A stretch of DNA of 64,000 nt, from the IMG/VR virus record IMGVR_UViG_3300032931_001151, positions 1 through 64,000 of that record. One strand, given 5' to 3'. The number at the start of each line of letters is the position of its first letter. Within the stretch, counting starts at the first letter, position 1. The notes below the pieces were generated by a model that ran no database searches, was not told where the DNA came from, and worked only from the letters and a program-made list of their open reading frames with translations. Below, piece by piece: positions 4,633 through 61,247 of this stretch. The position numbers were made by a program, and so were the translations under genes.

Positions 4633-4660
4633 ATTATAAGTTGAAATTCTATAAAGTCAA
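4633..4660 (-). promoter_or_regulatory. Early sigma70-type promoter TTGACT-N16-TATAAT
   Basis: Boxes read directly; intergenic. Confidence 0.8.
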
Positions 4661-4884
4661 CCTTCAAATCTAATAGCTTCCCAACCGCATACTTTGCAAG
4701 ATTTATCGTAGTATTTAACTCCATGGAAGTCATATTTCCTAGTGTTTTTGGAAACTATATTAACTACTTTACAATTCTCGCAAATACCGTGCTTCTTATT
4801 AGCAAGAAAATATGACTTAGGAGAACTACTTTTTCCCATAATGCATATAATACTACCTTTAACAAATCCATTATGTTGATTCAT
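4657..4884 (-). CDS. Small Cys-rich hypothetical protein
   Basis: Start moved to the ATG at 4884, which overlaps the pspC-like stop (ATGA); CIIC, CENC, CKVC. Confidence 0.6.
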   Translation of the reverse strand: MNQHNGFVKGSIICIMGKSSSPKSYFLANKKHGICENCKVVNIVSKNTRKYDFHGVKYYDKSCKVCGWEAIRFEG

Positions 4885-5051
4885 TTGGCTACCGCAAAAA
4901 TACCGAGTAGTAGATAGATAACTAAAAATGTTCCAACGGAACTTAAAAGTAAAATAATAGCAATGCAACGGATGAGAAAAACATCAATTTCCGTTTTGTT
5001 GCTTATAGTAGCACATACGCCCATTAGAGTTGCTTCGGCTTTCTTGCTCAT
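4881..5051 (-). CDS. pspC: PspC-domain membrane protein (56 aa, absent from the ORF track)
   Basis: Manual translation MSKKAEATLMGVCATISNKTEIDVFLIRCIAIILLLSSVGTFLVIYLLLGIFAVAK fits the PspC pattern GVC..ID..L(I/V)R..TM..IYL; AAGGAG RBS. Confidence 0.8.
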   Translation of the reverse strand: MSKKAEATLMGVCATISNKTEIDVFLIRCIAIILLLSSVGTFLVIYLLLGIFAVAK

Positions 5052-5071
5052 TGATATCTCCTTATATTGGA

Positions 5072-5099
5072 ATTATAGTAAACAAAAAGTAGAAGTCAA
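5072..5099 (-). promoter_or_regulatory. Early promoter TTGACT-N16-TATAAT
   Basis: Upstream of the pspC-like gene. Confidence 0.8.
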
Positions 5100-5103
5100 G
5101 GAT

Positions 5104-5715
5104 TTAAATATTTCCAAATTCATTGGGATAGATGTAGTTTTGATCAAATCCCTTGTATTCTATGCATCTTAATATACTAAATAGTCCTTGTATTTCCTTA
5201 ATATACTCTTCAGAAGATACTATAGTCTCGTCACCAACATAGTTATCCGCTATATAATATTCTATGTAACATAGAGTTATCAAAGTTGCAATGCGTAACT
5301 CAGTTATTCTATCGAGATGATATGGTTTCCTTATAGAATTGAATGCTATCCCATTAGGATTGGCTTTATATTCTTCTTGACAATGAATTCTATTAATATA
5401 AGTCGTATAATCAAATTTGTATTGGTATAGAACTTGATCAATTTTACTACTATTCACCCGCCAACATGAATTCTTCATATCATCATTAGCCCAATAATCA
5501 TCTACACTCTCAAAGTCCTTTGGAATGTGGTCAAAGAAATATCGAAGTTTCTCTTTTGCTCTTTGGAGAGTGCAAATCAATGAAGGTTCATTATCAATGA
5601 TATACGGATTCTTTAATGGTGGTAAGTAGACACTTAAATCAATTTTAGAATAATCATTAAATGGATTTATGATTCCGGGAAGTGGATACGGGAAAATTGA
5701 TTTGTAGTCAAACAT
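5104..5715 (-). CDS. Hypothetical protein
   Basis: 203 aa, TAATG overlap. Confidence 0.7.
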   Translation of the reverse strand: MFDYKSIFPYPLPGIINPFNDYSKIDLSVYLPPLKNPYIIDNEPSLICTLQRAKEKLRYFFDHIPKDFESVDDYWANDDMKNSCWRVNSSKIDQVLYQYKFDYTTYINRIHCQEEYKANPNGIAFNSIRKPYHLDRITELRIATLITLCYIEYYIADNYVGDETIVSSEEYIKEIQGLFSILRCIEYKGFDQNYIYPNEFGNI

Positions 5716-6122
5716 TAGTGAAACTCCACATCTTCATTTGCTTGAATGGCTTTTTCCAATCCTTTAATAAATGATTTAGTTTTACCTATAAAATACTCAT
5801 TGAGTGGATCCATTAGAGGAAGTAACTCTTCTAACCTATCTTTAAGCGGTTTCAATTGCTCTATTTTAATACTACCCTCGCAATCACTATGACATATAAG
5901 AATCATAATAGGATCTTTAGGAGTTTCTTTCCACTTCCCTTTAATATTTTGTTTTGTATAAATTGACCAATCTATATCTGGTTCCATATACTTGTATTTA
6001 AATCCTAAATCCATTTCAAAAGATTTATATTGTATTCTTGCAAGTTCCCCTAAATATCTTCTCCACTGACTAAAAGATGAATAAGATCCGTGCCAACAAT
6101 CGTGAGAAGTATCAAGCCCCAT
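5715..6122 (-). CDS. Conserved phage hypothetical protein
   Basis: MGLDTSHDCWHGSYSSF..HSDCEG..VEFH pattern. Confidence 0.75.
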   Translation of the reverse strand: MGLDTSHDCWHGSYSSFSQWRRYLGELARIQYKSFEMDLGFKYKYMEPDIDWSIYTKQNIKGKWKETPKDPIMILICHSDCEGSIKIEQLKPLKDRLEELLPLMDPLNEYFIGKTKSFIKGLEKAIQANEDVEFH

Positions 6123-6396
6123 TTGAGATTCCTTTATAGTAAGGGTATCCTAATTCCATTAAAAGTTGATTATAAGAATCCATTTCGGCTTTTGAAGTAA
6201 TGACTTCTTCCAATGCAAAATCGTATGCTTGACTTCCGTCTTCACAGTCATTCTTTTCCTCTTTAGCCGATTCGGCATTAACCGAAGCAATGAAAATTTG
6301 TTGTCTAAGCCATTCTCCCAGTGACTTAACGGATACAAATTCTCTATCAACAAACCCATCTTTACTTGGAATATATTCTAAATTAATATGATGCAT
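6112..6396 (-). CDS. Hypothetical protein
   Basis: 94 aa, AAGGA RBS. Confidence 0.65.
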   Translation of the reverse strand: MHHINLEYIPSKDGFVDREFVSVKSLGEWLRQQIFIASVNAESAKEEKNDCEDGSQAYDFALEEVITSKAEMDSYNQLLMELGYPYYKGISNGA

Positions 6397-6405
6397 TTGA
6401 TCCTT

Positions 6406-6900
6406 TCAAAACGGTGGCTCATCGGTTTCTTGTAAATATTTAATTTCAATTGGCTTTTCAACTAAATTCATCCCAACAATTTTCTTGTTTTTCTCATATG
6501 CATCAATTGTTCTATCATATCCTTGGATTTCTACATCACCAAATTCATCTATTTCGGATGATAGCCACTTAATATCACCTAAATAGTGAGATTCGTGAGT
6601 TGTTTTATCATACGAAATATACATTGTATTTAATTGTTTATTTGGAATGACCATATATTCACCATTAATGACCCTATAATATTCTTTTCCGTCTTCCTTA
6701 TAAGCTGGTTCCAAAATAACATAAGTTCGTGAAGTAATAGAGCCGATAGTCCATAGTTCAACTAATTTTTCTTTAGTAATTGGTTCTATACTTTTAATAA
6801 TAGCATCCACTTTATTTGAAATATCATCTTGTTGAGTTTTAGTTAGTGGAAATTTCTTAAGTTTCTTTCTAATATTCTTTAATGGCTTCAATAAATCCAT
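6406..6900 (-). CDS. Hypothetical protein
   Basis: 164 aa after promoter 6921-6948; acidic EPPF C-terminus. Confidence 0.7.
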   Translation of the reverse strand: MDLLKPLKNIRKKLKKFPLTKTQQDDISNKVDAIIKSIEPITKEKLVELWTIGSITSRTYVILEPAYKEDGKEYYRVINGEYMVIPNKQLNTMYISYDKTTHESHYLGDIKWLSSEIDEFGDVEIQGYDRTIDAYEKNKKIVGMNLVEKPIEIKYLQETDEPPF

Positions 6901-6920
6901 AATTATTTTTCCTTTGCCAC

Positions 6921-6948
6921 ATTATAGGCATCGGAAGCAACTTGTCAA
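6921..6948 (-). promoter_or_regulatory. Early promoter TTGACA-N16-TATAAT
   Basis: Both boxes are perfect consensus. Confidence 0.85.
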
Positions 6949-6950
6949 GT

Positions 6951-7514
6951 TTATTTAAATAACTTAATTTTTACATTCGTTGATATTATCTCTTTAATAG
7001 CATTTTTTTCATATTTCATATTATGCCATGGAAGCATTTGATCGGATGTATTATAATAATGGCTATTATATCCACTAGCAAATCCATAAAGATTTAATTC
7101 TTTGAAAGAAATATTATTTACTATCCACCTAATCATTGTCAACCCGGTAGTTTCAAATCCACTCCGCATTTTCTTATTTAATAAAATTGTTGAAGGTATT
7201 TTATACGGAATATATTTACTAACATCATTTTGAATTTCTACACTACTCACAAACCAATGTTTTAAATTGGAAATGTCAAAAATTGGAGGAGTATTACAAT
7301 AAAAGTGACAATATACATCCAATTTACTTCCTATATGTATATTGATGTCATTAGATTTAATGTTTTTGTTGAATTCATTAAATCTAATGACAATATCATT
7401 AGAATCTATTGATTTCCCATAATTTGATTTCAAAAGACTATCGGAGTTGCTTACGACTCCGATAGATGCATTATGAAAGAAATTATAGTTACTATTAGTA
7501 AAAAGTAATTTCAA
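6951..7514 (-). CDS. Glycosyltransferase family 29 (sialyltransferase-like)
   Basis: Sialylmotif L-like VVSNSDSLLKSNYGKSIDSNDIVIRFN, GSK, S-like TTGL..LYGF, HYY, and VS-like HNMKYE. Confidence 0.8.
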   Translation of the reverse strand: MKLLFTNSNYNFFHNASIGVVSNSDSLLKSNYGKSIDSNDIVIRFNEFNKNIKSNDINIHIGSKLDVYCHFYCNTPPIFDISNLKHWFVSSVEIQNDVSKYIPYKIPSTILLNKKMRSGFETTGLTMIRWIVNNISFKELNLYGFASGYNSHYYNTSDQMLPWHNMKYEKNAIKEIISTNVKIKLFK

Positions 7515-8323: not shown

Positions 8324-8330
8324 TTGAAAC

Positions 8331-8359
8331 CCCCTTTATATAGTATATTTATAAAGGGG
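8331..8359 (-). promoter_or_regulatory. T4-type late promoter TATAAATA (8346-8353) inside a 10-bp hairpin that pairs the peptidase RBS
   Basis: Perfect inverted repeat CCCCTTTATA-N9-TATAAAGGGG; the SD-like AAGGGGG lies 6 nt before the ATG. Confidence 0.75.
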
Positions 8360-8373
8360 TATTTAGTTAGAAA

Positions 8374-9487: not shown

Positions 9488-9569
9488 TTGCTAGTAGAAT
9501 TAAAAACATTATTACTATTCCTATCATTAAATAGTTAGGATTTCCTTTAAATTTCATTTTAATTTCCTT

Positions 9570-9980
9570 TTAGTTTCTTGAAACTTTAAAATTCCAATTG
9601 CAATAGTCTCTACTATTGACATCAATTGGACCATATTGATTTAATAAACTATCAACATCATTTTGACATTGGGATATTATATTTGGAATTTGTGATTTGT
9701 CAATGGAGAAAATATATCCGAGTTGCTCTTTAATTCCATATTCTATAGGCCGTTCATTGTATGTTGCTCTACAAATCCTCACCAATACTTCTTTTGATGG
9801 TCTATATCCCTTAACGTCTTCATTATAAATTTCATTAGTTTCTTGTATTTGAAGAATTACCACCGACAATGCGGGATTATCGGGGATTGGCTCCAAAACA
9901 TCTATTAGATAGAAATCCAAGTACCCCTTGGACCACTTTGAACTACAAGATGTATTTACGGAGTAGATGTAATGTTTCAT
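9570..9980 (-). CDS. Hypothetical protein
   Basis: 136 aa abutting the upstream stop. Confidence 0.7.
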   Translation of the reverse strand: MKHYIYSVNTSCSSKWSKGYLDFYLIDVLEPIPDNPALSVVILQIQETNEIYNEDVKGYRPSKEVLVRICRATYNERPIEYGIKEQLGYIFSIDKSQIPNIISQCQNDVDSLLNQYGPIDVNSRDYCNWNFKVSRN

Positions 9981-10721: not shown

Positions 10722-10766
10722 ATTATAATGAGTTATTAAGATTGTCAAGACGAAATCTTATAAATA
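10722..10766. promoter_or_regulatory. Divergent promoter pair: early TTGACA-N15-TATAAT (-, 10722-10748) and late TATAAATA (+, 10759-10766)
   Basis: Motifs read directly at the strand switch. Confidence 0.8.
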
Positions 10767-16305: not shown

Positions 16306-16333
16306 ATTATAAGGAACATTGAAACAAATGCAA
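16306..16333 (-). promoter_or_regulatory. Early promoter TTGCAT-N16-TATAAT
   Basis: Intergenic, upstream of the phosphoesterase. Confidence 0.65.
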
Positions 16334-18375: not shown

Positions 18376-18580
18376 TATTAAATTCCTTTAAAAGATAATT
18401 GACGGCGAATTCTTTATTAGAAAGTCCAACATATTTCCGAGAATCTATTGCTTCTTGCGGAACATCAATTTTAACACCATTATTATAGAAGTCAAGAGTT
18501 TGGATATCTAAGGCATTGAATTCTTTGATTATATTAAGAGCAAACTTGAGTGGCTCCAAGTCGTATTTTAGTTTATCCAC
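18368..18580 (-). CDS. Hypothetical protein (probable GTG start overlapping the radical SAM stop)
   Basis: The N-terminal extension in the track is just another frame of the GGCG tail. Confidence 0.55.
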   Translation of the reverse strand: MDKLKYDLEPLKFALNIIKEFNALDIQTLDFYNNGVKIDVPQEAIDSRKYVGLSNKEFAVNYLLKEFNNV

Positions 18581-19661
18581 ATCCACCCCCACACCCTCCA
18601 CCGCATGATGATGGCCTTGATCCACACCCACCACTATGATAATTACAAGTAGTTGACTTCGTGCTACCTAAAAGTTTCTTGTTAACTTCTTCAATTCCCG
18701 ACAACTTCTCAATTATCTTCTTATGAGAAGTTTCTTGAATCTCCTTATGTGCCTCAAATTCTTTTACGAGATTGGCCCATTTCTCATACCAAAAGGCTCC
18801 ATCGGGTGATGTAGGTTTCATATTAGTATCTACCTCTATCTTTCTAGACCAATCAGCATAAAGTTTGCCATTAGGATGGAATACAAGTTCATATAATTTG
18901 TTAAGGTATTGTGATGGTTCCGGATGTGATCCTTTCCACAATATTTGTTTATCTTTGCTAACTTGAATGGTTGTTCGACATACTGGACAATCATTACTTG
19001 ACTCAATACCCCATCTCTTCGTAAATATTTTTTCTACATTAGTTGGAGACACATCACCAGCCTCTTTACGGAATGAAATTGAACCAACTTCCAAATGTAC
19101 GAAAGCGTAGGCTATCATATGTTGAATAAATGCTTCGGTAGTTGAATCATTAATTATACAATTAATATTGAATTGATACTTATTTCCGTAATTCCTTATT
19201 ATATTCTTAATATTTGGCGTTGTTGGAACTACTTTACTCTTAAATATCTTTTGATTTTCATTATCATCAAAATGATGTCTTGAAATATTAATATGAGTAA
19301 CTACTTCCATAAGTTTCAAGTCATCTTTAAGCCAACTTTCTAATGCCGATCCATTAGTAGTTAGAACGACTCTATCCCATTTTCTATTTGAATTCTTTAT
19401 TGTATGTAGAATTGCACCAAGATGACCACTAATAGTTGGTTCCCCGCCAGAAATAGATAATGCCGGACAAATGCTATAAGGAATTTCATTAAATGCTTTA
19501 ATGAGGGATTGGATGTAATCGGAAGGTGGAACTATTTTACCGTCCTTACTATTCCAAAAACAAAACCCGCACTTAGCATTACAAAAGCCAGGTGTAATAA
19601 TGGTGAAATTAGGTTTATGACCACCTTCCGTGTATAAATCGGTTAGAATATTATATTTCAT
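18573..19661 (-). CDS. Radical SAM protein with a Gly/Cys-rich C-terminal tail
   Basis: CNAKCGFC (CX3CX2C), ISGGEPT, TTNG, NISRH; ends HSGGCGSRPSSCGGGCGGGCG. Confidence 0.9.
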   Translation of the reverse strand: MKYNILTDLYTEGGHKPNFTIITPGFCNAKCGFCFWNSKDGKIVPPSDYIQSLIKAFNEIPYSICPALSISGGEPTISGHLGAILHTIKNSNRKWDRVVLTTNGSALESWLKDDLKLMEVVTHINISRHHFDDNENQKIFKSKVVPTTPNIKNIIRNYGNKYQFNINCIINDSTTEAFIQHMIAYAFVHLEVGSISFRKEAGDVSPTNVEKIFTKRWGIESSNDCPVCRTTIQVSKDKQILWKGSHPEPSQYLNKLYELVFHPNGKLYADWSRKIEVDTNMKPTSPDGAFWYEKWANLVKEFEAHKEIQETSHKKIIEKLSGIEEVNKKLLGSTKSTTCNYHSGGCGSRPSSCGGGCGGGCG

Positions 19662-20324: not shown

Positions 20325-20352
20325 ATTATAACAAGTGAAATTAGAAAGTCAA
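20325..20352 (-). promoter_or_regulatory. Early promoter TTGACT-N16-TATAAT
   Basis: Read directly. Confidence 0.8.
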
Positions 20353-21767: not shown

Positions 21768-22797
21768 AGAATTTCCGTTATAGCATCGTCATCTATATAT
21801 GACAATATTGATGCTACGGTATTATTTGTTTCTCGTCTTACTCCAAGATAATCGTAATATGCCGTGTTACCTTCAATAATGATGAAGTTAGTGCCTAAAG
21901 GTGGAATTATATAGTCTTCCGAACTGTGTTGATTAAGAAAACTTAATATTATGTTCTTTTTAATTGAGAATTTTTTCATTTTGTTGGTTCCTTTATTAAT
22001 TCGACTTGATCGGTACTAACTGAAATAATGTTTCCATTCTTTAATCTAATTTTAAGAATCCTTGACGATCTATTAATAATAGTATCTAATACAACACCTT
22101 GCATAGATATAGAAGGAATGTTTACTTGTTTATCTTTCCAGGTTTTTTCAAAACTCTTTATTTGGTAAATAGATAGAAGAATTATACTAAAGAAAATTGA
22201 TATTAGGATAACAATTAATATTGAAGATTTTACCATAATCACAACTCCCATTGATAGTTTCTATAATATTCTTCAATTATATCAAGACAATTGGCAATGT
22301 CAACTTCATAAAATAATGTTGGATTATTAACTTCTCTCAAATAGTTAACAATGAACCATTGCCCAAACCTTAAATGGGCACTTTTAGGATCGGATCTATA
22401 TTGAAATAATAGTTTATTAAACGGTGGGGGATGCATTATTATTTTCGCTTATTAGTTTGTCAAGATACTTTTTTGATAAACATGAAGTATCTATGATTTT
22501 ATTTAAATTCTTTGCATTAGTCTCTTTTGCGGATAGTTCAATAAAATAAAAAGTACAATATTGTCTTAATGGGCTATCAACTAGATAAAGATAATAATTT
22601 CTAACAAATTCTACATTCCCATGTTTTAATAATGTGATTACTTCATCTTTTATACTTTCATCAAGTCTTGGGATGTTTAATTCTTCGCCTAATGCTGTAT
22701 ATAAAGATGGCCTATCTAATGAAATACAAACTCCTAGTGTTGTGCTAGTATGACCATTGGAATAAACCCAATTACCGTTTTTAATTATATATGTCAT
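21764..22797 (-). other. Run of four small hypothetical CDS (21764-21979, 21976-22251 with a TM segment, 22239-22436, 22417-22797)
   Basis: Overlapping start/stop codons, consistent strand. Confidence 0.6.
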
Positions 22798-23399: not shown

Positions 23400-23668
23400 T
23401 TCAATATTCCTTTTAATTTTCTTTCATAAGATTTAATATAAGCGATTTGATCTTCTTGATCAACATCATATCGTGGCATTGGATGAAAGTCAATAGGATT
23501 CTTTCCTTGACTTATAAGTTCTTGTTTTTCCTTTGAAATTAATTCAAGTACCTTATTATATTCTTTATTGACTAACTCTATAGTAGATGGATCTTTGCAA
23601 GAACAACAATACTTAAGCAATCCAATAAGCATTTGTTGTCGTAAAATTAAATCACTTAAAGTGGCCAC
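23396..23668 (-). CDS. Hypothetical protein
   Basis: 90 aa, coupled. Confidence 0.55.
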   Translation of the reverse strand: MATLSDLILRQQMLIGLLKYCCSCKDPSTIELVNKEYNKVLELISKEKQELISQGKNPIDFHPMPRYDVDQEDQIAYIKSYERKLKGILK

Positions 23669-24833
23669 AAAACCTCTTTAAATCTTCCGTATCATTATTT
23701 AATTGTCTAAACCAAATATTAGTTAACATTGCTCGTTGAGCAACCCCAATTTTTGACTTGTCTTTGGAATTGGAAATATCTAAAATAGAAATAATCTCTT
23801 CTCCGCTAATTTTTAACTCTTTAGGGGTTATTGCGAAATCCATCATATCTTGAATAATTAATACCACTTGGGTACTAACCTCTTGAAAAACACTTAATAA
23901 AATATGTAATTGTGGTTTTAAGTTGCCTATGATAGTATGTGGTAATGCCTTATCATCTACAATTCTTCTGGCTAACTCTACCACCTTAATGCAATTAGCA
24001 TCGGGCTTCATTATATTAAAGTCTCCACCATTTAAAAAGAATGCAACAAACATCCCAATTATCTTTTCTTCACCTTTTAACGAACTTAATTTAACTTTGA
24101 TAGGATTGAAAGTATCCCCAAAAACAACTTTCCCAATAGTTAATTCGTTTAATAAGTCAATTAATATAGAGGTATTTCCTTTAGTCCATGCTTTCTTTAA
24201 CTCATCAAAGATTCTCTCACCAGAAACACTCTTTAATGTGGGTGCTAACTCCTTAATAGCCTCTTTAGTTTCTTGGGAGATAGTAAAGCCTAAACGAGAA
24301 GAAAATTGAATTGCTCTTAAAATTCTTAAACTATCCTCAGAGAACCTATCAAATGGATTCCCAACCGTTCTAATGACTTTATTCTTAATATCTTCTAATC
24401 CATTATGAGGATCAATTAAACCACTTAAGTCATTATTAATGAAATTCCTTAATGGTAATGCCATTGAATTTATCGTGAAATCCCTACGAGATAAATCTGC
24501 TTCAATAGTAGCATTTGGGTCGGTTTGAACACTAAAATCCGTATGAGAGTTACCAGTTTTAATCTCTTTGATTCTTGGAATAGCAAAGTCAAATTCTTGA
24601 CCATGTACTACACCCTTAACGATGCCAAAAGATTGACCAACTTCTCCAGCTTTACCTATCTTATTAATAGCATTAGAAATTTGCTCTAAAGTTACTTTTC
24701 TAACTAAAAAGTCAATATCTTTAGGGATAATTCCTAATATCTTATCACGAATTGGTCCACCAACAACAAAGATTTCGGCACCAACTGACTCTAAGGTGCT
24801 TAAAATCTTCTCTAAAGTTTCTTTATTATCCAT
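23652..24833 (-). CDS. cca: CCA-adding enzyme / tRNA nucleotidyltransferase (class II)
   Basis: VGGPIRD, DIDF, DLSRRDFTINSMA, FSEDSLRILRAIQFSSRL, SGERI. Confidence 0.9.
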   Translation of the reverse strand: MDNKETLEKILSTLESVGAEIFVVGGPIRDKILGIIPKDIDFLVRKVTLEQISNAINKIGKAGEVGQSFGIVKGVVHGQEFDFAIPRIKEIKTGNSHTDFSVQTDPNATIEADLSRRDFTINSMALPLRNFINNDLSGLIDPHNGLEDIKNKVIRTVGNPFDRFSEDSLRILRAIQFSSRLGFTISQETKEAIKELAPTLKSVSGERIFDELKKAWTKGNTSILIDLLNELTIGKVVFGDTFNPIKVKLSSLKGEEKIIGMFVAFFLNGGDFNIMKPDANCIKVVELARRIVDDKALPHTIIGNLKPQLHILLSVFQEVSTQVVLIIQDMMDFAITPKELKISGEEIISILDISNSKDKSKIGVAQRAMLTNIWFRQLNNDTEDLKRFCGHFK

Positions 24834-24850: not shown

Positions 24851-24878
24851 ATTATATGAGAAACTTAAGAAAAGTCAA
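24851..24878 (-). promoter_or_regulatory. Early promoter TTGACT-N16-TATAAT
   Basis: Upstream of cca. Confidence 0.8.
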
Positions 24879-26647: not shown

Positions 26648-26675
26648 ATTATATAAAGAATCTGCAATAAGTCAA
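26648..26675 (-). promoter_or_regulatory. Early promoter TTGACT-N16-TATAAT (pncA-pth2 operon)
   Basis: The -35 box overlaps the stop of the upstream gene. Confidence 0.8.
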
Positions 26676-27428: not shown

Positions 27429-27794
27429 TTATTCCTTTATATATTTTGCAAAATCTTTATATGTTCCAAATTTCCCTTGTATTGTAGCAAGGATTGCCTC
27501 TTTTGTCAACCCTAGATCTTTCATAAGGAATTCCAAGATTGCATCTCTATCCATTTCTTTGAATTGGCAAATTGGGCAACATTTGATATCAACTTCGTAT
27601 GGATAGTCATCATTATCTTCTTTTGCTAAGTCTTCATCAATTAGATATTGTTCATCAAATGTGTGATTAGATTTACAAGTACACATTTGACAATCACTCA
27701 AAGATAGATCCATCCCCGATTCTATTCTACCGGTAACTTGGCAAATGAATGAAGATGAACTTGAATTAGTTACAAACCCGGCTCTGAATTTCAT
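27429..27794 (-). CDS. FVTNSSSSSF-leader protein 2, Cys-rich (probably metal-binding)
   Basis: MKFRAGFVTNSSSSSFICQ..CQMCTCKSNH..CCPICQ. Confidence 0.85.
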   Translation of the reverse strand: MKFRAGFVTNSSSSSFICQVTGRIESGMDLSLSDCQMCTCKSNHTFDEQYLIDEDLAKEDNDDYPYEVDIKCCPICQFKEMDRDAILEFLMKDLGLTKEAILATIQGKFGTYKDFAKYIKE

Positions 27795-27797
27795 GTA

Positions 27798-28193
27798 TTA
27801 TTCCTTTTCTAGTAGAATTATGTTTTTCCCGTCACATATATCATTCATTTGGTCATTAAGTATATCGTTATGATAACTAATGCACTTTTTGTATACCACA
27901 TACCCATCATTGATTAATTTTCTATATTTATCAATATCGGAAGTAGTCATACAAATATATTCTCTTTTTAAATAACTATTTAAGTCGGATTCAGTCGAAA
28001 ACAACTTTTCGGCCTCATGTGTATCATTACTATCTTCAAATTCAAACATTTGCTTAATAGAGTTAATAATAAACCTCTTCCAAATCTCATTGTCAACTTC
28101 AATAAACTTATCAATATTATCTAATCCACCTTTAACGGCTATAATGAAACTTGATGAACTTGAATTAGTTACAAAACCATTACGGATTTTCAT
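27798..28193 (-). CDS. FVTNSSSSSF-leader protein 1
   Basis: MKIRNGFVTNSSSSSFII; the ATG at 28193 overlaps the radical SAM stop (ATGA) after AAGGAG. Confidence 0.85.
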   Translation of the reverse strand: MKIRNGFVTNSSSSSFIIAVKGGLDNIDKFIEVDNEIWKRFIINSIKQMFEFEDSNDTHEAEKLFSTESDLNSYLKREYICMTTSDIDKYRKLINDGYVVYKKCISYHNDILNDQMNDICDGKNIILLEKE

Positions 28194-29308
28194 ATACACT
28201 CCTTATTACAAATGTTTATATCTGGAACTAGAACACAAGGCTTGCAAGTATCAATGTGGTGCTTGCACTTTTGACATTTACCAGATTCTAATCCAAATTG
28301 TTGTTTCTTCCTAAACAATTCAAATTGTAGACTCTCCCACGCATCTTCAAGAGATACATCATTTAGATTTACACCATATGCTTGTTTCTGATCAAATGAA
28401 CAAGGACAAAAAATACCATTTGGACTAATATATGCGGAGAAACATCCCGAGTCACAACTTGAGACACTTTGAGAAATAACATTCTTCATATATTTACCAA
28501 TAAACATACACGAACATGAGTCAAACCCAATCTTAAACGACAACGGTTTATCAAGCAACTCAAAAAGTTCATTCAAACTTGGTTCTTTACCGGTAATAAC
28601 ATTACTTAAATCACCTTGACCAATATTCTTATAGTTCAATATAATAAGAGCATTTACACCTTTAGGTACTTTATTCTCTTTAATAATTGAAATTAGTTCA
28701 TCAATTGTTTTATTGGATAGAACATAATGAATATTTGTGGTTACACCGGCATCAATGAATTTATTTAAAGCATTGATAGTATGATCTTGTCTCTGCCAAC
28801 TACACGCAACTGCGCCGGCATATTGTTTAGTAATTTGGACCTCTTCATCCGTTAATCCAATTCCACTTGTAGTGTAATTAGGGGCTATATGATTATCCCT
28901 ACACAACTTCATAAACTCTTTAAAGTTTTCATGTTTATTTGGGTCGCCACGACCCCCTAATGCTATTTCGTAAACCTTTCCAACACATTGACTTATGATT
29001 TTTGAAAACACATCATAAGTCATATTTGGCTCATCTTTAATAAAACCAGATTGATAACAATCAATCCCACCTTGCTTGCATACACCCCTTGCTTTACAGT
29101 GACCCATTATACCAATGTCAAGCAAGTGAGGAACCGAACTCATAAAAGGATCTTTCCCCGTATCTTTGCCATTCTCAATGATTCCACTACGGTAATAAAA
29201 CCCAGTAGTCATATTGAAGGATGACTTAAAGTTATAAATCTTGTCGTAAGAATGGATAACACCATCCTTAACAAAAGATGTAACTTTTTGGGTATCACAA
29301 AGGATCAT
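28190..29308 (-). CDS. Radical SAM protein with SPASM/twitch domain and an atypical cluster motif
   Basis: DIGIMGHCKARGVCKQGGIDCYQ (CX5CX6C), ALGGRGDP, YTTSG, GFDSC, SCDSGCFSAYISPNG..PCSF, CQKC..C..C. Confidence 0.88.
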   Translation of the reverse strand: MILCDTQKVTSFVKDGVIHSYDKIYNFKSSFNMTTGFYYRSGIIENGKDTGKDPFMSSVPHLLDIGIMGHCKARGVCKQGGIDCYQSGFIKDEPNMTYDVFSKIISQCVGKVYEIALGGRGDPNKHENFKEFMKLCRDNHIAPNYTTSGIGLTDEEVQITKQYAGAVACSWQRQDHTINALNKFIDAGVTTNIHYVLSNKTIDELISIIKENKVPKGVNALIILNYKNIGQGDLSNVITGKEPSLNELFELLDKPLSFKIGFDSCSCMFIGKYMKNVISQSVSSCDSGCFSAYISPNGIFCPCSFDQKQAYGVNLNDVSLEDAWESLQFELFRKKQQFGLESGKCQKCKHHIDTCKPCVLVPDINICNKECI

Positions 29309-30216
29309 GGAGTCCCTTCTTTTAGTACTTGAATTGTTTTATTTAGTTTATTAGTAACATTAGATAATATGGTTTGAGTTTTTCGCATTGACTCAACCTT
29401 AGTCAATCTTTCATATATATCCGACAACTCTTGAATGAGAACCTTTCTCTCCGTTTTGCTTACTAACTTATTCTCTTCAACAAATAGAATATCTTTAATT
29501 ATTTTTTTAATTCCGTCTTTATACTCCTTTAACTTAGTAACACACTCTTCATACGTGCCACGGAAAGAGCATACTTTCTCATAATTCTCTTTTGTAAAAA
29601 TATAATTTCCATTCATCTTGGCATACTTAATTCCAGAATGTGAAGCATTTTGAATATAATGACCTTTAGTTGATATTTTTTCATCATCGCTATAAAACTC
29701 AACTTCAAGTTCCTTACAAATCTCCTTTAAAGCATCTTGAGGGGAGATAGACATATTGCAAATAGGGTTATCAATTTCCCCACCCAATTGCGCCAATGGA
29801 ACGATTTCTTTATACTCCGAATAAATTACACCACTCACATTGAATGGAACATCTTCAAAAACCTCTTTATGTTGATAATGAGGTTCCCAAGTTTTAATGA
29901 ATTTCTTGTAAGCATATTCATCATCAAGGTTGTCAAACTCCCAATCTTCTTCTCCTTCATAACCTTTATTCTTTAATTCTTCACTCTCTTTTTTATATTC
30001 CATAATCATTTTAATAGACCCTTTCGGGCCATCATAATGAGTAATAGACGATATGGTAACTTTCTTAACTACTTTAATTGGAAGTATATGCAATTCATAT
30101 TCAACTGGATACCCATCACCTTTATCAATAGTGATTCTATCGTTAATAACATAGTTGCCATAATTTTTTAGAGTAAAAATGTAAGTACCCATGCGAGTCT
30201 TTAGAAAATTAATCAT
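29305..30216 (-). CDS. Hypothetical protein, first gene of the radical SAM/NSSSSS operon
   Basis: 303 aa; ATGA-coupled to the radical SAM gene. Confidence 0.75.
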   Translation of the reverse strand: MINFLKTRMGTYIFTLKNYGNYVINDRITIDKGDGYPVEYELHILPIKVVKKVTISSITHYDGPKGSIKMIMEYKKESEELKNKGYEGEEDWEFDNLDDEYAYKKFIKTWEPHYQHKEVFEDVPFNVSGVIYSEYKEIVPLAQLGGEIDNPICNMSISPQDALKEICKELEVEFYSDDEKISTKGHYIQNASHSGIKYAKMNGNYIFTKENYEKVCSFRGTYEECVTKLKEYKDGIKKIIKDILFVEENKLVSKTERKVLIQELSDIYERLTKVESMRKTQTILSNVTNKLNKTIQVLKEGTP

Positions 30217-30235: not shown

Positions 30236-30262
30236 ATTATACGACGAATTAAGAGAAGTCAA
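30236..30262 (-). promoter_or_regulatory. Early promoter TTGACT-N15-TATAAT
   Basis: Heads the 30216-26672 operon. Confidence 0.75.
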
Positions 30263-31259: not shown

Positions 31260-31287
31260 ATTATATCTTGGAAAAGATAAAAGTCAA
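31260..31287 (-). promoter_or_regulatory. Early promoter TTGACT-N16-TATAAT
   Basis: Read directly. Confidence 0.8.
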
Positions 31288-33715: not shown

Positions 33716-33743
33716 ATTATAGTGAGAGTTTAGAGAAAGTCAA
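33716..33743 (-). promoter_or_regulatory. Early promoter TTGACT-N16-TATAAT
   Basis: Upstream of the radical SAM-GT4 genes. Confidence 0.8.
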
Positions 33744-36005: not shown

Positions 36006-36032
36006 ATTATATGGAAATTTTTAGAAAGTCAA
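36006..36032 (-). promoter_or_regulatory. Early promoter TTGACT-N15-TATAAT
   Basis: Read directly. Confidence 0.75.
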
Positions 36033-38468: not shown

Positions 38469-38496
38469 ATTATAACCATAAGAAACAAAAAGTCAA
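38469..38496 (-). promoter_or_regulatory. Early promoter TTGACT-N16-TATAAT
   Basis: Read directly. Confidence 0.8.
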
Positions 38497-38502: not shown

Positions 38503-39600
38503 TTATTCGTAGTTCCTTATAGCAACAATATATGGGAATCTCGGAATACCATCGGGAGTTCTCTTAAAGTGTCTAACCGTAGCCATTTGGCCTTTGACTT
38601 CACTAGCACTTTCAAGTAACTCCTTAAGCCATTCTTGATTACCTTTAATATTACTCTTGCACATTCTACCATCTTCTAATCTAATGGTGGCATATCCGGC
38701 CATACCAGTTCTATTACCTTCTCCCTCAAATATATCAATTATTTCAAATTCGGTATCGTCAAATTCTTTTCTCTTGAGAAGATTCTTTGATCTCTTATGC
38801 TCATATGGCTTATCGAGCCGAATTATTTGACCTTCATATCCACCTTGAATATATTGCCCATTTAATTCATCTAATTTTTGTTGACTATCAACTTTAGTTG
38901 CCTCAACTATAACTAATGATGGATGTAAATCTTTAATATCTTCGATAATTCTCTCATATCTTTTACTAAATGGCAACTTACCTTCACTAATATAATCATA
39001 TATCCAATATTGAATAACCTTTGAACTTTCTTCTAAATCTTGCGATGTTGGCTTAGTTTTCTTAACAAGAGACATTATTTTATTAAAATCGTTACATAGT
39101 TTGTGGCAATATAATTCTCCATCAAAAATAGCATTTGGGTTTTTATCAAATATTGGTTGAAGTGCTTTTCTAATATGTGGAGCAGATAAAATGGGCTTGC
39201 CATTTCTTGACCACATTCCATCATTTTTACATACACACCTCGACCCATCAAGCTTGACGTTAGACCAAATTGGGAACATACTTTCATCAAATTCATCTTC
39301 GTATTTCTTCGCAAGCATAGGTTCAACAAATTTTTGCACATCAATCTTCGTAATATCCTCATAGTAGCCCGAATCAACTTTCTTTTGCCACTTTGAAGTT
39401 GCTTCCGCTACTGCTTGATCTTGTGGAGTTGTTTCGTTTGCTCTTCCTACATTTTTCGATTCGCAAATAGTTGGCATTGAAGTAGTTATCTTGCCGTCTT
39501 TAAGTCCTTCATGAGTCTTGAATGTATTATCAATGACTTCAATAGTCCATTGTTGGATTGCACCATTAGAGGTTCTAGAATATAATGTGGGCAATTTCAT
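38503..39600 (-). CDS. lig: ATP-dependent DNA ligase with an N-terminal WGR-like domain
   Basis: PMLA, motif I KLDGSR, FDGELY, YD, YEGQIIR, KRSKNLLKRK, PRFP. Confidence 0.95.
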   Translation of the reverse strand: MKLPTLYSRTSNGAIQQWTIEVIDNTFKTHEGLKDGKITTSMPTICESKNVGRANETTPQDQAVAEATSKWQKKVDSGYYEDITKIDVQKFVEPMLAKKYEDEFDESMFPIWSNVKLDGSRCVCKNDGMWSRNGKPILSAPHIRKALQPIFDKNPNAIFDGELYCHKLCNDFNKIMSLVKKTKPTSQDLEESSKVIQYWIYDYISEGKLPFSKRYERIIEDIKDLHPSLVIVEATKVDSQQKLDELNGQYIQGGYEGQIIRLDKPYEHKRSKNLLKRKEFDDTEFEIIDIFEGEGNRTGMAGYATIRLEDGRMCKSNIKGNQEWLKELLESASEVKGQMATVRHFKRTPDGIPRFPYIVAIRNYE

Positions 39601-42430: not shown

Positions 42431-42477
42431 ATTATAGTGCCAACAACGAAAAGTCAATCAATAAATTTTGATAAATA
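42431..42477. promoter_or_regulatory. Divergent promoters: early TTGACT-N15-TATAAT (-, 42431-42457) and late-like GATAAATA (+, 42470-42477)
   Basis: At the strand switch. Confidence 0.7.
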
Positions 42478-54467: not shown

Positions 54468-54495
54468 ATTATATTGATATTTTTCAAAGAGTCAA
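54468..54495 (-). promoter_or_regulatory. Early promoter TTGACT-N16-TATAAT
   Basis: Read directly. Confidence 0.75.
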
Positions 54496-55560: not shown

Positions 55561-55588
55561 GTTGGTGAATATTTTCCTTATGAGATTG

Positions 55589-55630
55589 ATTATAGTCCAA
55601 AAATTAAGATGTCAATAGTTGCTATAAATA
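55589..55630. promoter_or_regulatory. Divergent promoters: early TTGACA-N15-TATAAT (-, 55589-55615) and late TATAAATA (+, 55623-55630)
   Basis: At the strand switch. Confidence 0.78.
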
Positions 55631-55645
55631 TCTATTGGGGAATTT

Positions 55646-55801: not shown

Positions 55802-55857
55802 AAAATGGTTTCCATGTGATATAATAGTAAAACATATTCAATTGAAAGGAATATATT

Positions 55858-56109: not shown

Positions 56110-56115
56110 GAACTT

Positions 56116-56166: not shown

Positions 56167-56168
56167 TA

Positions 56169-57528: not shown

Positions 57529-57531
57529 TAT

Positions 57532-58956: not shown

Positions 58957-58977
58957 TAGAATAAAAGGATATTTTCA

Positions 58978-59952
58978 ATGGACCTGAAAAGTAGAATTAA
59001 ATCATTATTTACAGAGGGCTTACTAATAGAAAAAGCCGATGTAAGTAATATTATTGGTAAAAAGAAAATACTAAAGAAACAATCGGTGAAAAAAAGTAAG
59101 ATAAAAAGCAAAAGAAAAAATAACTTTAAAACTCAAGATGCAAGAAGAATATTGGCATCTAAACACGGTGTTAGCAATGCTTTAAAGAAAATGGAAAATA
59201 AATATGTAATGGATTATGCAGAAATTGCAAAACTAATGAGGAAATATAGTTATACCTTCAATAAAGACAAGGGAAGTTGGCTAAAGAAGAAAGATGTCGG
59301 ATCCGAAGTCAAATCAACGTCTACTAAAGCAACTATTGAGCCAACTTCAAATAAACCCGAAACTTCTAAACCAAAAGAGTCTAAAAAGGCAAAAATTAAA
59401 GTTGCTAAAATTGATGATATTGAAGATAAATTAAAATCCGATAAATCTTCAAGTATGAAGAAGTCTTCAAATATTGAAGATAAAAATGTTATAAGTAATG
59501 AGAGTATGAAGAGTTATCAAGGAAGATTAATATCCTATTTATTAAATTCAAATAATGAAGAGGGTGGATGGCTTGATGCTATACAAATAGTTGACGAAGA
59601 GCCTTTAGAATTCTATCTACCAAAAGAATCCATTTACGAGTACCTATCAAATCAAGATATTACTTGGATAGAAGATCGTAAAGTGTGGGTTGACATAGAC
59701 GGAGATTACCCAATTTCCAACGAAATTCATAATGGTAGAATAGGAATAACCGCAAGAGCAATATTGGCTAATAACGGATTTATTAATTTCCTTAATGTTG
59801 ATGAAGTAAGTGATGAAGAAACTCTTGACTCTATACGAGAACTGGGATATAATTGGGGCGATGGCATGTGGGTTAAACCCGAAATAACCACCGAAATTGT
59901 TAAAAGACAATTCCCCGAATTAGTAACCAATGACATTATAGGCACAATATAA
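58978..59952 (+). CDS. Late protein with a Lys-rich N-half (putative DNA-binding internal protein)
   Basis: MDLKSRIKSLFTEGLLIEK; basic N-half and acidic C-half. Confidence 0.7.
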   Translation: MDLKSRIKSLFTEGLLIEKADVSNIIGKKKILKKQSVKKSKIKSKRKNNFKTQDARRILASKHGVSNALKKMENKYVMDYAEIAKLMRKYSYTFNKDKGSWLKKKDVGSEVKSTSTKATIEPTSNKPETSKPKESKKAKIKVAKIDDIEDKLKSDKSSSMKKSSNIEDKNVISNESMKSYQGRLISYLLNSNNEEGGWLDAIQIVDEEPLEFYLPKESIYEYLSNQDITWIEDRKVWVDIDGDYPISNEIHNGRIGITARAILANNGFINFLNVDEVSDEETLDSIRELGYNWGDGMWVKPEITTEIVKRQFPELVTNDIIGTI

Positions 59953-59956
59953 ACAC

Positions 59957-59984
59957 TTGACTTATCATTATAGGCAACTATAAT
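59957..59984 (+). promoter_or_regulatory. Early promoter TTGACT-N16-TATAAT
   Basis: Upstream of the RNA ligase. Confidence 0.82.
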
Positions 59985-60005
59985 AAGGCCAAGGAATAAA
60001 AATAT

Positions 60006-61211
60006 ATGTCTCTTCAAGATTATCTAACAAAGTATTTTCCCAACGGTCCTATTGGTGAATTTGAAAGCCAAAAATGTGAAATTATTTCACATTTCATAGA
60101 TCGTTTTGGTGTCAATGTGAAAAATGTAGGGAATTTATATCTATTTAAATATGATCAACTATTAGTTAAATTTACTATTCCATTAACAAAGGAATGCCGT
60201 GGCCATATTTATCAATATATAAATGGCAATTGGTTGCGAGTATGTAATGCTATGGATAAATTTTGGAATTTTGACGAAGGATTTTGTCCTATCTTTGAGG
60301 AATCAGAATTTCAACAATATATAAACCAAATTGAACTAAAAAATAAAGAAGATGGTAGTCTTATACATCTTTATTGGCTTGAAGATCAACAAAAGTGGAA
60401 TTTATCCACTTCAGGTTCAATTGTGTGTTTTACCGTTGGAGATTCGTCGCTCACTTTTGACCAACTATTTTGGAAGACACTTAATAAAGATGTTACCGAG
60501 TTTACTTCTAAACTTGATAAAAACTACGTTTATATTTTTGAATTATGCTCAACTCTTAATCAAATAGTGTCTATGTATAAAAATGATAGAATTTATCTAT
60601 TAAACGTTCGCCATAACCGATATGGCACATATCTTCCTATTGATTCTATTGCTCAAGAGTTGGGTCTTCTTATTCCAACTTCAACTTTCCTATATCAATT
60701 AGATATTAATACTAAAAATGATATGGTAATGTGGGTTGAAAAAAATTGCGTTGACGATGTTGATTGTAAGAATAAAGAGGGATTCGTTGGTTATATCAAT
60801 GGGGTTCCATCTTTTAAGATTAAAACCAATCGTTATAAGTTCTTACACTCATTCAAAGGTAATAACGAGAAAGAGACTCGTAATAACATCATTGATGCTT
60901 ATTTCACCGATACTATTGACGATGTTTATAATGACCTCCACGAATCAAGCAAAATGTTTGTTGAATCATTAAGAATCAAAGTATTAAACCTTCTAAATGA
61001 TGTCAATTTGGCAATCGTCAAAATGAATGGCTTGAAATTTGAAACCCAAAAAGAATATGCGTTATTTGTGATTGCGAATACTCCTAAAATGGTAAATGGG
61101 TTCTTTTTCGCCAATAAGGAAATAATTCTTAAGAGTGAAGGTATTACCGAATTATTTACCAATTGGATTAAGCAACATCATAAAAAATATGAAGATTATT
61201 GGAAATCTTAA
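60006..61211 (+). CDS. RNA ligase, T4 Rnl1-like
   Basis: LFKY, ECRG, DKFWN..E, motif I KEDGSLI, FEL, EGFV, FKIKT..Y. Confidence 0.88.
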   Translation: MSLQDYLTKYFPNGPIGEFESQKCEIISHFIDRFGVNVKNVGNLYLFKYDQLLVKFTIPLTKECRGHIYQYINGNWLRVCNAMDKFWNFDEGFCPIFEESEFQQYINQIELKNKEDGSLIHLYWLEDQQKWNLSTSGSIVCFTVGDSSLTFDQLFWKTLNKDVTEFTSKLDKNYVYIFELCSTLNQIVSMYKNDRIYLLNVRHNRYGTYLPIDSIAQELGLLIPTSTFLYQLDINTKNDMVMWVEKNCVDDVDCKNKEGFVGYINGVPSFKIKTNRYKFLHSFKGNNEKETRNNIIDAYFTDTIDDVYNDLHESSKMFVESLRIKVLNLLNDVNLAIVKMNGLKFETQKEYALFVIANTPKMVNGFFFANKEIILKSEGITELFTNWIKQHHKKYEDYWKS

Positions 61212-61219
61212 TATGGTAG

Positions 61220-61247
61220 TTGACAATACTAGTTGTTTAGTTATAAT
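61220..61247 (+). promoter_or_regulatory. Early promoter TTGACA-N16-TATAAT
   Basis: Both boxes are perfect consensus. Confidence 0.85.

What the first reader, a model, noticed from the sequence alone, without database searches (positions are those of the whole stretch)
4633..61247. Early promoters have 15-16 bp spacers, not the canonical 17
Seen: 18 intergenic TTGAC(T/A) (one TTGCAT)...TATAAT promoters counted by hand. Thirteen have a 16-bp spacer (4633, 5072, 6921, 16306, 20325, 24851, 26648, 31260, 33716, 38469, 54468, 59957, 61220) and five have 15 bp (10722, 30236, 36006, 42431, 55589). I found no TTGAC promoter at 17 bp, and TTGACT dominates. Known: the sigma70 optimum is 17 +/- 1. Inference: this reflects a host lineage with shifted sigma geometry, or a phage-encoded sigma factor or RNAP remodeller, and could serve as a host-prediction handle.
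Basis: seen in the sequence. Interest (0 to 1): 0.65.

Follow-up and report, generated by a model that had tools for sequence, protein, structure and literature searches.

The report
Phage early promoters with 16-bp spacers
About two dozen very strong host-type (sigma-70-like) early promoters of an uncultivated T4-like jumbo phage really do have 16- or 15-bp spacers instead of 17. The same short spacing is also the commonest one for perfect-consensus promoters in other large phages and in gammaproteobacterial chromosomes, so this is an extreme case of a known design and not evidence for a new sigma factor.

Summary
In the window, TTGACN-N16-TATAAT occurs 15 times (0.13 expected), N15 5 times (0.16 expected) and N17 once, inside an ORF. 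Across the whole 214-kb phage record the counts are 15:7, 16:20, 17:2, 18:2, and every site upstream of a gene has 15 or 16. Five diverged relatives keep 16 or 15 at orthologous promoters even though the spacer sequences differ.

The genome is a distant T4-superfamily jumbo phage. It has a gp55-like late sigma and TATAAATA late promoters, but no sigma-70 region 2 or region 4 domain. The host's primary sigma must therefore read these promoters.

The proposed cause, a shifted sigma geometry or a phage sigma, is not needed:
- In E. coli phage RB49 and Klebsiella phage RaK2, perfect-hexamer promoters also favour 16 bp, while one-mismatch promoters sit at 17.
- In 151 sampled Gammaproteobacteria genomes, perfect TTGACW/TATAAT pairs peak at 16 (72 of 150 listed rows against 22 for a reversed control).

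T4, RB69, HTVC008M, cyanophages and PA5oct have a mode of 17.

What remains unusual is how extreme this clade is: no 17 or 18, about 25% at 15, and 16 kept even where the hexamers are imperfect. A host-specific optimum cannot be excluded, because no host was identified. I rate this a new member of a known kind, of modest interest.

The parts
   Evidence: SD and ATG about 20 nt downstream
4633..4660 (-). early promoter TTGACT-N16-TATAAT
5072..5099 (-). early promoter TTGACT-N16-TATAAT
6921..6948 (-). early promoter TTGACA-N16-TATAAT
9676..9703 (-). TTGACA-N16-TATAAT inside ORF 9570-9980; no SD downstream; doubtful as a promoter
10722..10748 (-). early promoter TTGACA-N15-TATAAT
16306..16333 (-). 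early promoter TTGCAT-N16-TATAAT (imperfect -35)
20325..20352 (-). early promoter TTGACT-N16-TATAAT
   Evidence: orthologues in L025 and L027 also have 16
22276..22303 (-).
24851..24878 (-). early promoter TTGACT-N16-TATAAT upstream of the CCA-adding enzyme gene
   Evidence: orthologues in L025, L026 and L027 all have 16
26648..26675 (-). early promoter TTGACT-N16-TATAAT
30236..30262 (-). early promoter TTGACT-N15-TATAAT
   Evidence: the orthologue in L025 has 16
31260..31287 (-). early promoter TTGACT-N16-TATAAT
33716..33743 (-). early promoter TTGACT-N16-TATAAT
36006..36032 (-). early promoter TTGACT-N15-TATAAT
38469..38496 (-). early promoter TTGACT-N16-TATAAT upstream of the DNA ligase gene
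42431..42457 (-). early promoter TTGACT-N15-TATAAT
54468..54495 (-). early promoter TTGACT-N16-TATAAT
55589..55615 (-). early promoter TTGACA-N15-TATAAT
59957..59984 (+). early promoter TTGACT-N16-TATAAT upstream of the RNA ligase gene
   Evidence: orthologues have 16, 16, 15, 15 in four genomes
61220..61247 (+). early promoter TTGACA-N16-TATAAT
   Evidence: the orthologue in L013 has 17
59825..59853 (+). TTGACT-N17-TATAAT inside ORF 58978-59952; not counted as a promoter
   Evidence: the same in-ORF match occurs in relatives L014 and L024
55811..55825 (+). example of the second promoter class: extended -10 (TGnTATAAT) without a -35

Best explanation
These are early promoters of an uncultivated T4-superfamily jumbo phage, read by the unmodified host RNA polymerase with its primary sigma (sigma-70 / sigma-A type).

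Their design is:
- a perfect -35 (TTGACT or TTGACA);
- a perfect -10 (TATAAT);
- usually no TGn;
- a short spacer of 16 bp, or 15 in about a quarter;
- an A start about 7 nt after the -10;
- a Shine-Dalgarno site 1-2 nt after the start.

The short spacer is the usual partner of two consensus hexamers. It keeps a promoter that recruits polymerase maximally from binding so tightly that escape is slowed. Ptac, rrn P1-type promoters and the perfect-hexamer early promoters of RB49, RaK2 and Aeh1 show the same combination.

Shown here: the sites, their statistics, their placement, their conservation, the absence of a phage sigma-70, and the same 16-bp preference elsewhere. Inferred: that the host sigma reads them, the start site, and the kinetic reason.
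For: **Sites and statistics:**

**Placement:** all perfect 15/16 sites sit 17-21 nt (a few up to 52) upstream of a start codon. A is present at position 7 after TATAAT in 20 of 24, followed by AAGGAG.

**Phage identity:** T4-type TerL, sheath, PolB, topoisomerase II, gp41/44/61/32/46/47, UvsX, RegA and rIIA/B. A gp55-like late sigma matches phrog_234 at E=4e-21. TATAAATA occurs in 23 upstream regions against 1.8 expected.

**No phage sigma-70:** no Sigma70_r2 or r4 domain.

**Same pattern in phages of ordinary hosts:**
- RB49: perfect 16:10, 17:6; one mismatch 16:2, 17:30 (Fisher p=8e-5).
- RaK2: perfect 16:9, 17:7, 18:3; one mismatch 16:4, 17:28, 18:10 (p=0.012).
- G000: perfect 15:6, 16:18, 17:0; one mismatch 16:8, 17:4 (p=0.011).

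**Chromosomes:** in 151 genomes of the class of a Pseudomonadales MAG, the listed TTGACW-N-TATAAT rows are 15:24, 16:72, 17:37, 18:17. The reversed control gives 33/22/41/54.

**Literature:**
- A fully consensus promoter impedes clearance, and 20% of promoters have 16 bp (PMC2613000).
- E. coli promoters with 16- or 18-bp spacers have better hexamers (bioRxiv 10.1101/2025.10.20.683477).
- A 16-nt class including rRNA promoters is described (PMC9303308).
- That Ptac has a 16-bp spacer and rrnB P1 has one too is from my own knowledge.
Against: - The clade is more extreme than any comparison. There is no 17 or 18 upstream of genes and about 25% are at 15, a length that is poor in E. coli.
- 18 would detune a promoter as well as 16 does, yet it is never used.
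- In relative L024, and among the one-mismatch promoters of the clade, the spacer stays at 15 or 16. In RB49 and RaK2 imperfect promoters move to 17. Compensation alone therefore does not explain everything.
- Other phages with perfect hexamers keep 17: HTVC008M 12 of 13, P-SSM2 14 of 21, PA5oct 11 of 17.
- There are no transcription start data and no known host.
- The discriminator is only mildly GC-rich, so the promoters are not strictly rrn P1-like.
Confidence: 0.5

Rival explanations
1. The (unknown) host's RNA polymerase or primary sigma has a true spacer optimum of about 16 bp, between 15 and 16. The phage simply copies its host's consensus.
For: - The distribution 15:6, 16:18, 17:0, 18:0 is symmetric around about 15.8.
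- Imperfect promoters of the clade also stay at 15 or 16.
- The trait is conserved across relatives with 31-40% GC.
- The spacing of perfect pairs differs between bacterial lineages: Gammaproteobacteria peak at 16, Cyanobacteriota are broad over 16-18, and G194 and G176 peak at 17.
- Phages roughly mirror this. Cyanophages and the SAR11 phage sit at 17. Aeromonas phages Aeh1 and 44RR and Vibrio phage KVP40 sit at 16 to 17.
Against: - No host was identified.
- I know of no lineage with a 16-bp optimum.
- Phages of one host differ from each other: on E. coli, T4 and RB69 sit at 17 while RB49's perfect class sits at 16.
- The extended -10 class of the same phage is canonical.
Confidence: 0.27
2. 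The template sets the optimum, not the polymerase. Freshly injected linear (relaxed) and possibly hypermodified DNA has a different twist, so 16 bp gives the hexamer phasing that 17 bp gives on supercoiled host DNA.
For: - The torsional model of PMC9303308 uses thetaP = 17 x a0 x (1 - 0.06). At sigma = 0 this equals 16.0 bp (my arithmetic).
- The record carries genes that may modify DNA: a dCMP deaminase, nucleoside deoxyribosyltransferase-like proteins, glycosyltransferases, a Mom-like domain and radical SAM enzymes.
Against: - T4, RB69, HTVC008M and the cyanophages also inject linear DNA and T4 DNA is heavily modified, yet all use 17.
- The same paper states that 16-nt spacers do not follow its model.
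- No modification was demonstrated here.
Confidence: 0.1
3. A phage protein delivered with the DNA, or a cryptic phage sigma, remodels sigma region 4 or the beta-flap and shortens the -35/-10 distance.
For: - T4-type phages are known to inject RNAP modifiers such as Alt (established knowledge).
- Many early and virion ORFs have no assigned function.
Against: - There is no sigma-70 r2 or r4 domain.
- phmmer finds no AsiA, MotA, Alt, ModA/B or Alc homologue.
- The hexamers are exact sigma-70 consensus, which argues for unmodified recognition.
- 16 bp works without such a factor in E. coli phages.
Confidence: 0.05
4. Founder effect or concerted evolution. All early promoters descend from one mobile promoter cassette that happened to have 16 bp, like the PeSL cassettes of RB49-type phages or the repeated cassettes seen in RaK2 and genome G215.
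For: - RaK2 has a repeated '...CAGTACTG-TATAAT' 16-bp family.
- G215 has about 30 copies of two 16-bp cassettes.
Against: - In G000 the spacer sequences are unrelated to each other.
- Orthologous promoters in relatives have diverged in sequence but keep their length. This indicates selection on length.
Confidence: 0.05

Closest known systems
Early promoters of pseudo-T-even phage RB49 (E. coli), and of Aeh1 and KVP40
   Same: A T4-type phage with TTGACA-type -35 and TATAAT -10 in front of many small early genes. 16 bp is the commonest spacer of the perfect-hexamer class: RB49 16:13-14, 17:10; Aeh1 16:5, 17:4.
   Different: RB49 has many 17-bp promoters, some with stem-loop spacers, and its imperfect promoters are overwhelmingly at 17. 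The G000 clade has essentially no 17 and has a 15-bp class.
T4 and RB69 early promoters
   Same: The same genome type and the same logic: host sigma-70 for early genes, gp55 with TATAAATA for late genes. The spacer is T-rich just after the -35.
   Different: T4 uses (G)TTTAC with a 17-bp spacer and a TGn-like 'tgg' before the -10. No Alt, AsiA or MotA homologue was found here.
Ptac and rrn P1-type promoters (consensus or near-consensus hexamers with a 16-bp spacer)
   Same: Consensus hexamers plus 16 bp. Upstream of the -35 the sequence is A/T-rich, 83-92% AT at -6 to -11. The 16-bp peak of perfect pairs in Gammaproteobacteria includes many spacers ending in CCC, as in rrnB P1 (the rrnB P1 sequence is from my knowledge).
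   Different: There is no strongly GC-rich discriminator (38-58% GC at positions 1-4), so stringent-type regulation is not implied.
Textbook sigma-70 promoter (17 +/- 1)
   Same: The hexamers, their orientation and their distance to the start are canonical, and 16 bp is inside the accepted range (PMC2613000).
   Different: The mode is 16 instead of 17, and a quarter of the promoters are at 15, outside the accepted range.

Membership tests
sigma-70 / sigma-A dependent -35/-10 promoter | -35 hexamer close to TTGACA | tested here: met
   TTGACT or TTGACA exact in 27 sites of the record
sigma-70 / sigma-A dependent -35/-10 promoter | -10 hexamer close to TATAAT | tested here: met
   TATAAT exact
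sigma-70 / sigma-A dependent -35/-10 promoter | spacer of 17 +/- 1 bp | tested here: inconclusive
   16 bp (in range) in about 75% and 15 bp (out of range) in about 25%; none at 17 or 18 upstream of genes
sigma-70 / sigma-A dependent -35/-10 promoter | placed upstream of genes in the right orientation, more often than chance | tested here: met
   15 vs 0.13 and 5 vs 0.16 expected; TATAAT to ATG is 17-21 nt for most
sigma-70 / sigma-A dependent -35/-10 promoter | transcription starts 6-8 nt after the -10 and depends on the host primary sigma | not testable with these tools
   Only indirect evidence: A at position 7 in 20 of 24.
T4-type temporal programme (host sigma early, gp55 late) | gp55-like late sigma and TATAAATA late promoters | tested here: met
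   phrog_234 at E=4e-21; TATAAATA in 23 upstream regions vs 1.8 expected; conserved in four relatives
T4-type temporal programme (host sigma early, gp55 late) | AsiA/MotA middle-mode appropriation | tested here: not met
   No phmmer hit at E<=1. Instead there is a class of extended -10 promoters without a -35.
phage-encoded sigma-70-family factor for early genes | a gene with sigma-70 region 2 and/or region 4 | tested here: not met
   PF04542 and PF04545: no match at E<=1 in six frames; controls were positive
rrn P1-like (stringent) promoter class | 16-bp spacer plus GC-rich discriminator | tested here: not met
   The spacer criterion is met. The discriminator is only 25-58% GC and is followed by an A run.

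The most novel reading that the evidence does not exclude
The clade's early promoters reveal a real shift of about one base pair in the -35/-10 geometry of the transcribing enzyme. The cause would be either a still unidentified host lineage whose primary sigma holoenzyme prefers 15-16 bp, or a virion-delivered factor or modified template that shortens the optimum. In that case spacer length would carry host information.
Probability: 0.25. Interest if true: 0.6.

Novelty: new member of a known kind. Interest (0 to 1): 0.3.

Why it matters
The finding gives a clean set of about 27 promoters per genome, conserved across a clade, in which both hexamers are perfect and the spacer is never 17. Together with the RB49, RaK2 and Gammaproteobacteria counts, it supports a general rule: consensus hexamers go with a 16-bp spacer. 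That rule is useful for promoter prediction in phage genomes and for designing strong synthetic promoters. It also warns against reading a 16-bp mode as a sign of an exotic sigma factor. If the residual shift (15 bp common, 17 absent) proved to be host-specific, spacer histograms could add a small amount of information to host prediction for uncultivated phages.

Tried and rejected
1. **16 bp as the T4-family norm.** I supposed that T4's GTTTAC-17 might equal TTTACN-16. This is rejected: in T4 it is (G)TTTACN-17-TATAAT, with 7 at 17 and 1 at 18. RB69 is also at 17.

2. **Host identification.** Every attempt failed.
   - megablast against phages found nothing.
   - The best cultured protein hits are only about 30-41% identical: PhiW-14, cyanophages and PA5oct.
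   - An rIIB scan of IMG/VR found nothing.
   - A ClpP scan of genomes found nothing.
   - NadE of relative L027 gives only 40-45% hits, to Acidobacteriota and one Pseudomonadales MAG.
   - CCA-enzyme homologues carry no organism names.
   - The protein atlas lead to Campylobacterota is weak, and Campylobacter T4-like phages show no such promoters.
   - Sample identifiers were not found in papers.

4. **Whole-record scans of metagenomic relatives.** These are not held, so I used 20-kb loci instead.

5. **Provirus label.** The 3.3 kb that was trimmed off is more phage genes, with no host flank.

6. **A TTTGGA box as a middle-promoter element.** Its spacing to the -10 peaks at 1-2 and at 11-13 nt. 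This is suggestive only and I did not pursue it.

7. **Possible tool bias toward short gaps.** A reversed-pattern control excluded this.

The large profile search, structure prediction and complex prediction were not needed. No alternative genetic code was used.

The sampled Gammaproteobacteria set contains one unpublished genome (G044).

Full report
**What the window is.**
The 64-kb window is the first part of a 214,200-bp IMG/VR virus record with 33% GC. The record encodes a T4-type large terminase, tail sheath, family-B DNA polymerase and topoisomerase II. It also has homologues of T4 gp41, gp44, gp62, gp61, gp32, gp46, gp47, UvsX, RegA, rIIA and rIIB. The best hits in cultured phages are only about 30-41% identical, so this is a distant, uncultivated T4-superfamily jumbo phage. 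The 'provirus' label has no basis in the flank. The 3.3 kb trimmed from the source contig (JGI 3300032931) holds more small phage genes, and a second contig continues with further early genes and promoters.

**The observation.**

| Spacer in window | Matches | Expected from shuffles |
|---|---|---|
| N16 | 15 | 0.13 |
| N15 | 5 | 0.16 |
| N17 | 1 | 0.13 |

- The single 17-bp match lies inside an ORF.
- Three further 16-bp sites were missed: 2416, 22276, and the doubtful 9676.
- Over the whole record the histogram for TTGACN...TATAAT is 15:7, 16:20, 17:2, 18:2.
- The 14-, 17-, 18- and 20-bp matches nearly all lie inside ORFs. One 18-bp match (201783) lies upstream of a gene but lacks an SD-start motif and is not counted as a promoter.
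- With a Shine-Dalgarno site and start codon downstream, the counts are 15:6, 16:18, 17:0, 18:0.
- The promoters are uniformly placed. Position 7 after TATAAT is A in 20 of 24, AAGGAG follows within 1-2 nt, and TATAAT to ATG is mostly 17-21 nt. This implies leaders of only about 12-15 nt.
- The spacers share no sequence beyond a T-rich start.

**Conservation.**
rIIB and CCA-enzyme homologues led to syntenic relatives from four other samples: L013/L025, L014/L026, L024 and L027, plus L022, with 31-40% GC.
- Orthologous promoters keep their length while the spacer sequence diverges. rIIB has 16 in all four genomes. rIIA has 15, 15, 15, 16. RNA ligase has 16, 16, 15, 15. orf148 has 16 in all four.
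- One orthologue changed from 16 to 17.
- Perfect sites with SD in the relatives sum to 15:3, 16:19, 17:2.
- In L024 the hexamers are imperfect, yet the spacer is still 15 or 16.

**Who reads them.**
No Sigma70_r2 or Sigma70_r4 domain is found in six frames of the record, and the controls were positive. The only sigma is a gp55-type late factor at 166103-166594. This fits TATAAATA occurring in 23 upstream regions against 1.8 expected. A third promoter class, about 15 intergenic TGnTATAAT sites without a -35, precedes replication and other genes. phmmer finds no AsiA, MotA, Alt, ModA/B or Alc homologue. The exact sigma-70 hexamers therefore point to the host's primary sigma.

**Is 16 bp unusual? 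Phage comparisons.**
I applied the same scan to other large phages.

| Phage (host) | Spacer counts |
|---|---|
| T4 (E. coli) | 17:7, 18:1 |
| RB69 (E. coli) | mode 17 |
| HTVC008M (SAR11) | 12 of 13 at 17 |
| Syn9 (Synechococcus) | 8 of 11 at 17 |
| P-SSM2 (Prochlorococcus) | 14 of 21 at 17 |
| PA5oct (Pseudomonas) | 11 of 17 at 17 |
| RB49 (E. coli) | 15:2, 16:13-14, 17:10 |
| RaK2 (Klebsiella) | 16:15, 17:16, 18:8 |
| Aeh1 (Aeromonas), <=1 mismatch with SD | 16:17, 17:12 |
| KVP40 (Vibrio) | 16:6, 17:4 |
| 44RR (Aeromonas) | 16:5, 17:3 |

The split by hexamer quality is informative.

| Phage | Perfect hexamers | One mismatch | Fisher p |
|---|---|---|---|
| RB49 | 16:10, 17:6 | 16:2, 17:30 | 8e-5 |
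| RaK2 | 16:9, 17:7, 18:3 | 16:4, 17:28, 18:10 | 0.012 |
| G000 | 15:6, 16:18, 17:0 | 15:1, 16:8, 17:4 | 0.011 |

In phages of E. coli and Klebsiella, whose sigma-70 is the reference for the 17-bp optimum, two perfect hexamers go with 16 bp.

**Chromosomes.**
A NadE scan supplied genome handles. Counts below are my tallies of the 150 listed rows per call.

| Set | Pattern | 15 | 16 | 17 | 18 |
|---|---|---|---|---|---|
| 151 genomes, class of a Pseudomonadales MAG (Gammaproteobacteria) | TTGACW-N-TATAAT | 24 | 72 | 37 | 17 |
| same genomes | reversed control | 33 | 22 | 41 | 54 |
| 61 genomes drawn from the same class | -10 TAAAAT or TACAAT | 40 | 58 | 35 | 17 |
| Cyanobacteriota | TTGACW-N-TATAAT | 18 | 47 | 46 | 39 |

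- In the Gammaproteobacteria set, many of the 16-bp spacers end in CCC, as in rrn P1.
- With the weakened -10 the 16-bp peak is weaker.
- Two small AT-rich genomes of the Cyanobacteriota phylum peak at 17, and a third carries about 30 copies of 16-bp cassettes.
- One unpublished genome (G044) is in the Gammaproteobacteria sample. None of the tallied rows comes from it.

**Literature.**
- About 20% of promoters have 16 bp, and a fully consensus promoter is counter-productive because it impedes clearance (PMC2613000).
- E. coli promoters with 16- or 18-bp spacers have better hexamers (bioRxiv 10.1101/2025.10.20.683477).
- A 16-nt class including rRNA promoters behaves differently from other spacer lengths (PMC9303308).
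- The paper on five T4-like genomes did not discuss spacer length (PMC1524935).

**Interpretation.**
The promoters are ordinary in kind: host-sigma early promoters of a T4-type phage. They are built on the 'two consensus hexamers plus short spacer' design that also dominates perfect-hexamer promoters in RB49, RaK2, Aeh1 and gammaproteobacterial chromosomes. Neither a phage sigma nor a host with shifted geometry is needed to explain a 16-bp mode.

What is not fully explained is the extremity of the clade:
- 17 and 18 are absent;
- about 25% are at 15;
- 16 is retained when the hexamers are imperfect.

G000 differs significantly from RB49, RaK2, PA5oct and HTVC008M (Fisher p from 2e-3 to 4e-9). 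It differs only weakly from Aeh1: p=0.03 in the <=1-mismatch set and p=0.2 in the perfect set.

A host-specific optimum (confidence 0.27), a template effect (0.1) or a delivered factor (0.05) remain possible. On the torsional model, 17 bp at sigma -0.06 equals 16.0 bp on relaxed DNA. T4 and the others contradict this as a general rule.

**Verdict.**
The finding is a new member, at the short end, of a known class. Interest is modest unless the residual shift proves host-specific.

Noticed in passing
window 55811-55825(+), 63927-63941(+); G000 108068, 119114, 119162, 131654, 142072, 158697, 158718, 166591, 166649, 188869, 201821, 205819, 208613: A second promoter class: about 15 intergenic extended -10 sites ((a)TGnTATAAT) with no -35, in front of replication, structural-module and other genes. 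This may be the middle mode of a phage that lacks AsiA and MotA.
   Followed up: partly
G000 166103-166594 (L006:2103-2594, -) and 23 upstream regions: A gp55-like late sigma factor (phrog_234, E=4e-21) and the T4-type late promoter TATAAATA, which is 13-fold enriched upstream of genes. One late promoter is conserved in four relatives.
   Followed up: yes
G000 208273-214085 (L008:4273-10085): A cluster of 18 tRNA genes driven by 15/16-bp promoters. It includes a tRNA with anticodon CTA (an amber suppressor, called tRNA-Pyl by ARAGORN). TAG is the rarest stop codon, at 19 of 263 called genes.
   Followed up: partly
G000 68960-69035 (L001:4960-5035); the same place in L013, L014, L024: After rIIB there is a GC-rich hairpin followed by a T run, a terminator, with a TATAAT in its loop and a conserved TTTTGGA box 11-13 nt upstream. 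The TTTGGA-to-TANAAT spacing peaks at 1-2 and 11-13 nt genome-wide. This may be a middle-promoter box.
   Followed up: partly
24 early promoters of G000 (window and rest): Leaders are very short and uniform. The probable start is an A 7 nt after TATAAT (20 of 24). The Shine-Dalgarno AAGGAG begins 1-2 nt after it, and TATAAT to ATG is mostly 17-21 nt.
   Followed up: yes
RB49 (L148-L156), RaK2 (L157-L174): In these E. coli and Klebsiella phages, promoters with two perfect hexamers prefer a 16-bp spacer, while one-mismatch promoters sit at 17 (Fisher p=8e-5 and 0.012). RaK2 has a repeated 16-bp family ending in CAGTACTG-TATAAT.
   Followed up: yes
genomes G001-G155 (Gammaproteobacteria sample), G156-G265 (Cyanobacteriota sample): Perfect TTGACW/TATAAT pairs peak at 16 bp in the Gammaproteobacteria sample (72 of 150 listed rows; reversed control 22). 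They are spread over 16-18 in Cyanobacteriota. G194 and G176 peak at 17. G215 carries about 30 copies of two 16-bp promoter cassettes.
   Followed up: partly
window 27481-27509(-) and 59825-59853(+): Two in-ORF promoter-like matches with 17-bp spacers, TTGACA-17-TACAAT and TTGACT-17-TATAAT. Both are conserved in relatives, apparently as coding sequence.
   Followed up: partly
window 18573-19661, 23652-24833, 28190-30216, 38503-39600, 60006-61211; relatives L025-L027: The early region is rich in RNA and tRNA repair genes and NAD-related genes. It holds a CCA-adding enzyme, T4-type RNA ligase, DNA ligase, PTH2, NUDIX, a nicotinamidase-like isochorismatase, radical SAM/SPASM proteins, and NadE in one relative.
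   Followed up: no
source contig of G000 (L021) and L022: IMG/VR classes the record as a provirus, but the 3.3 kb trimmed off carries small phage genes only. A 15-kb contig from another sample extends the early region with three more 16-bp promoters.
   Followed up: yes
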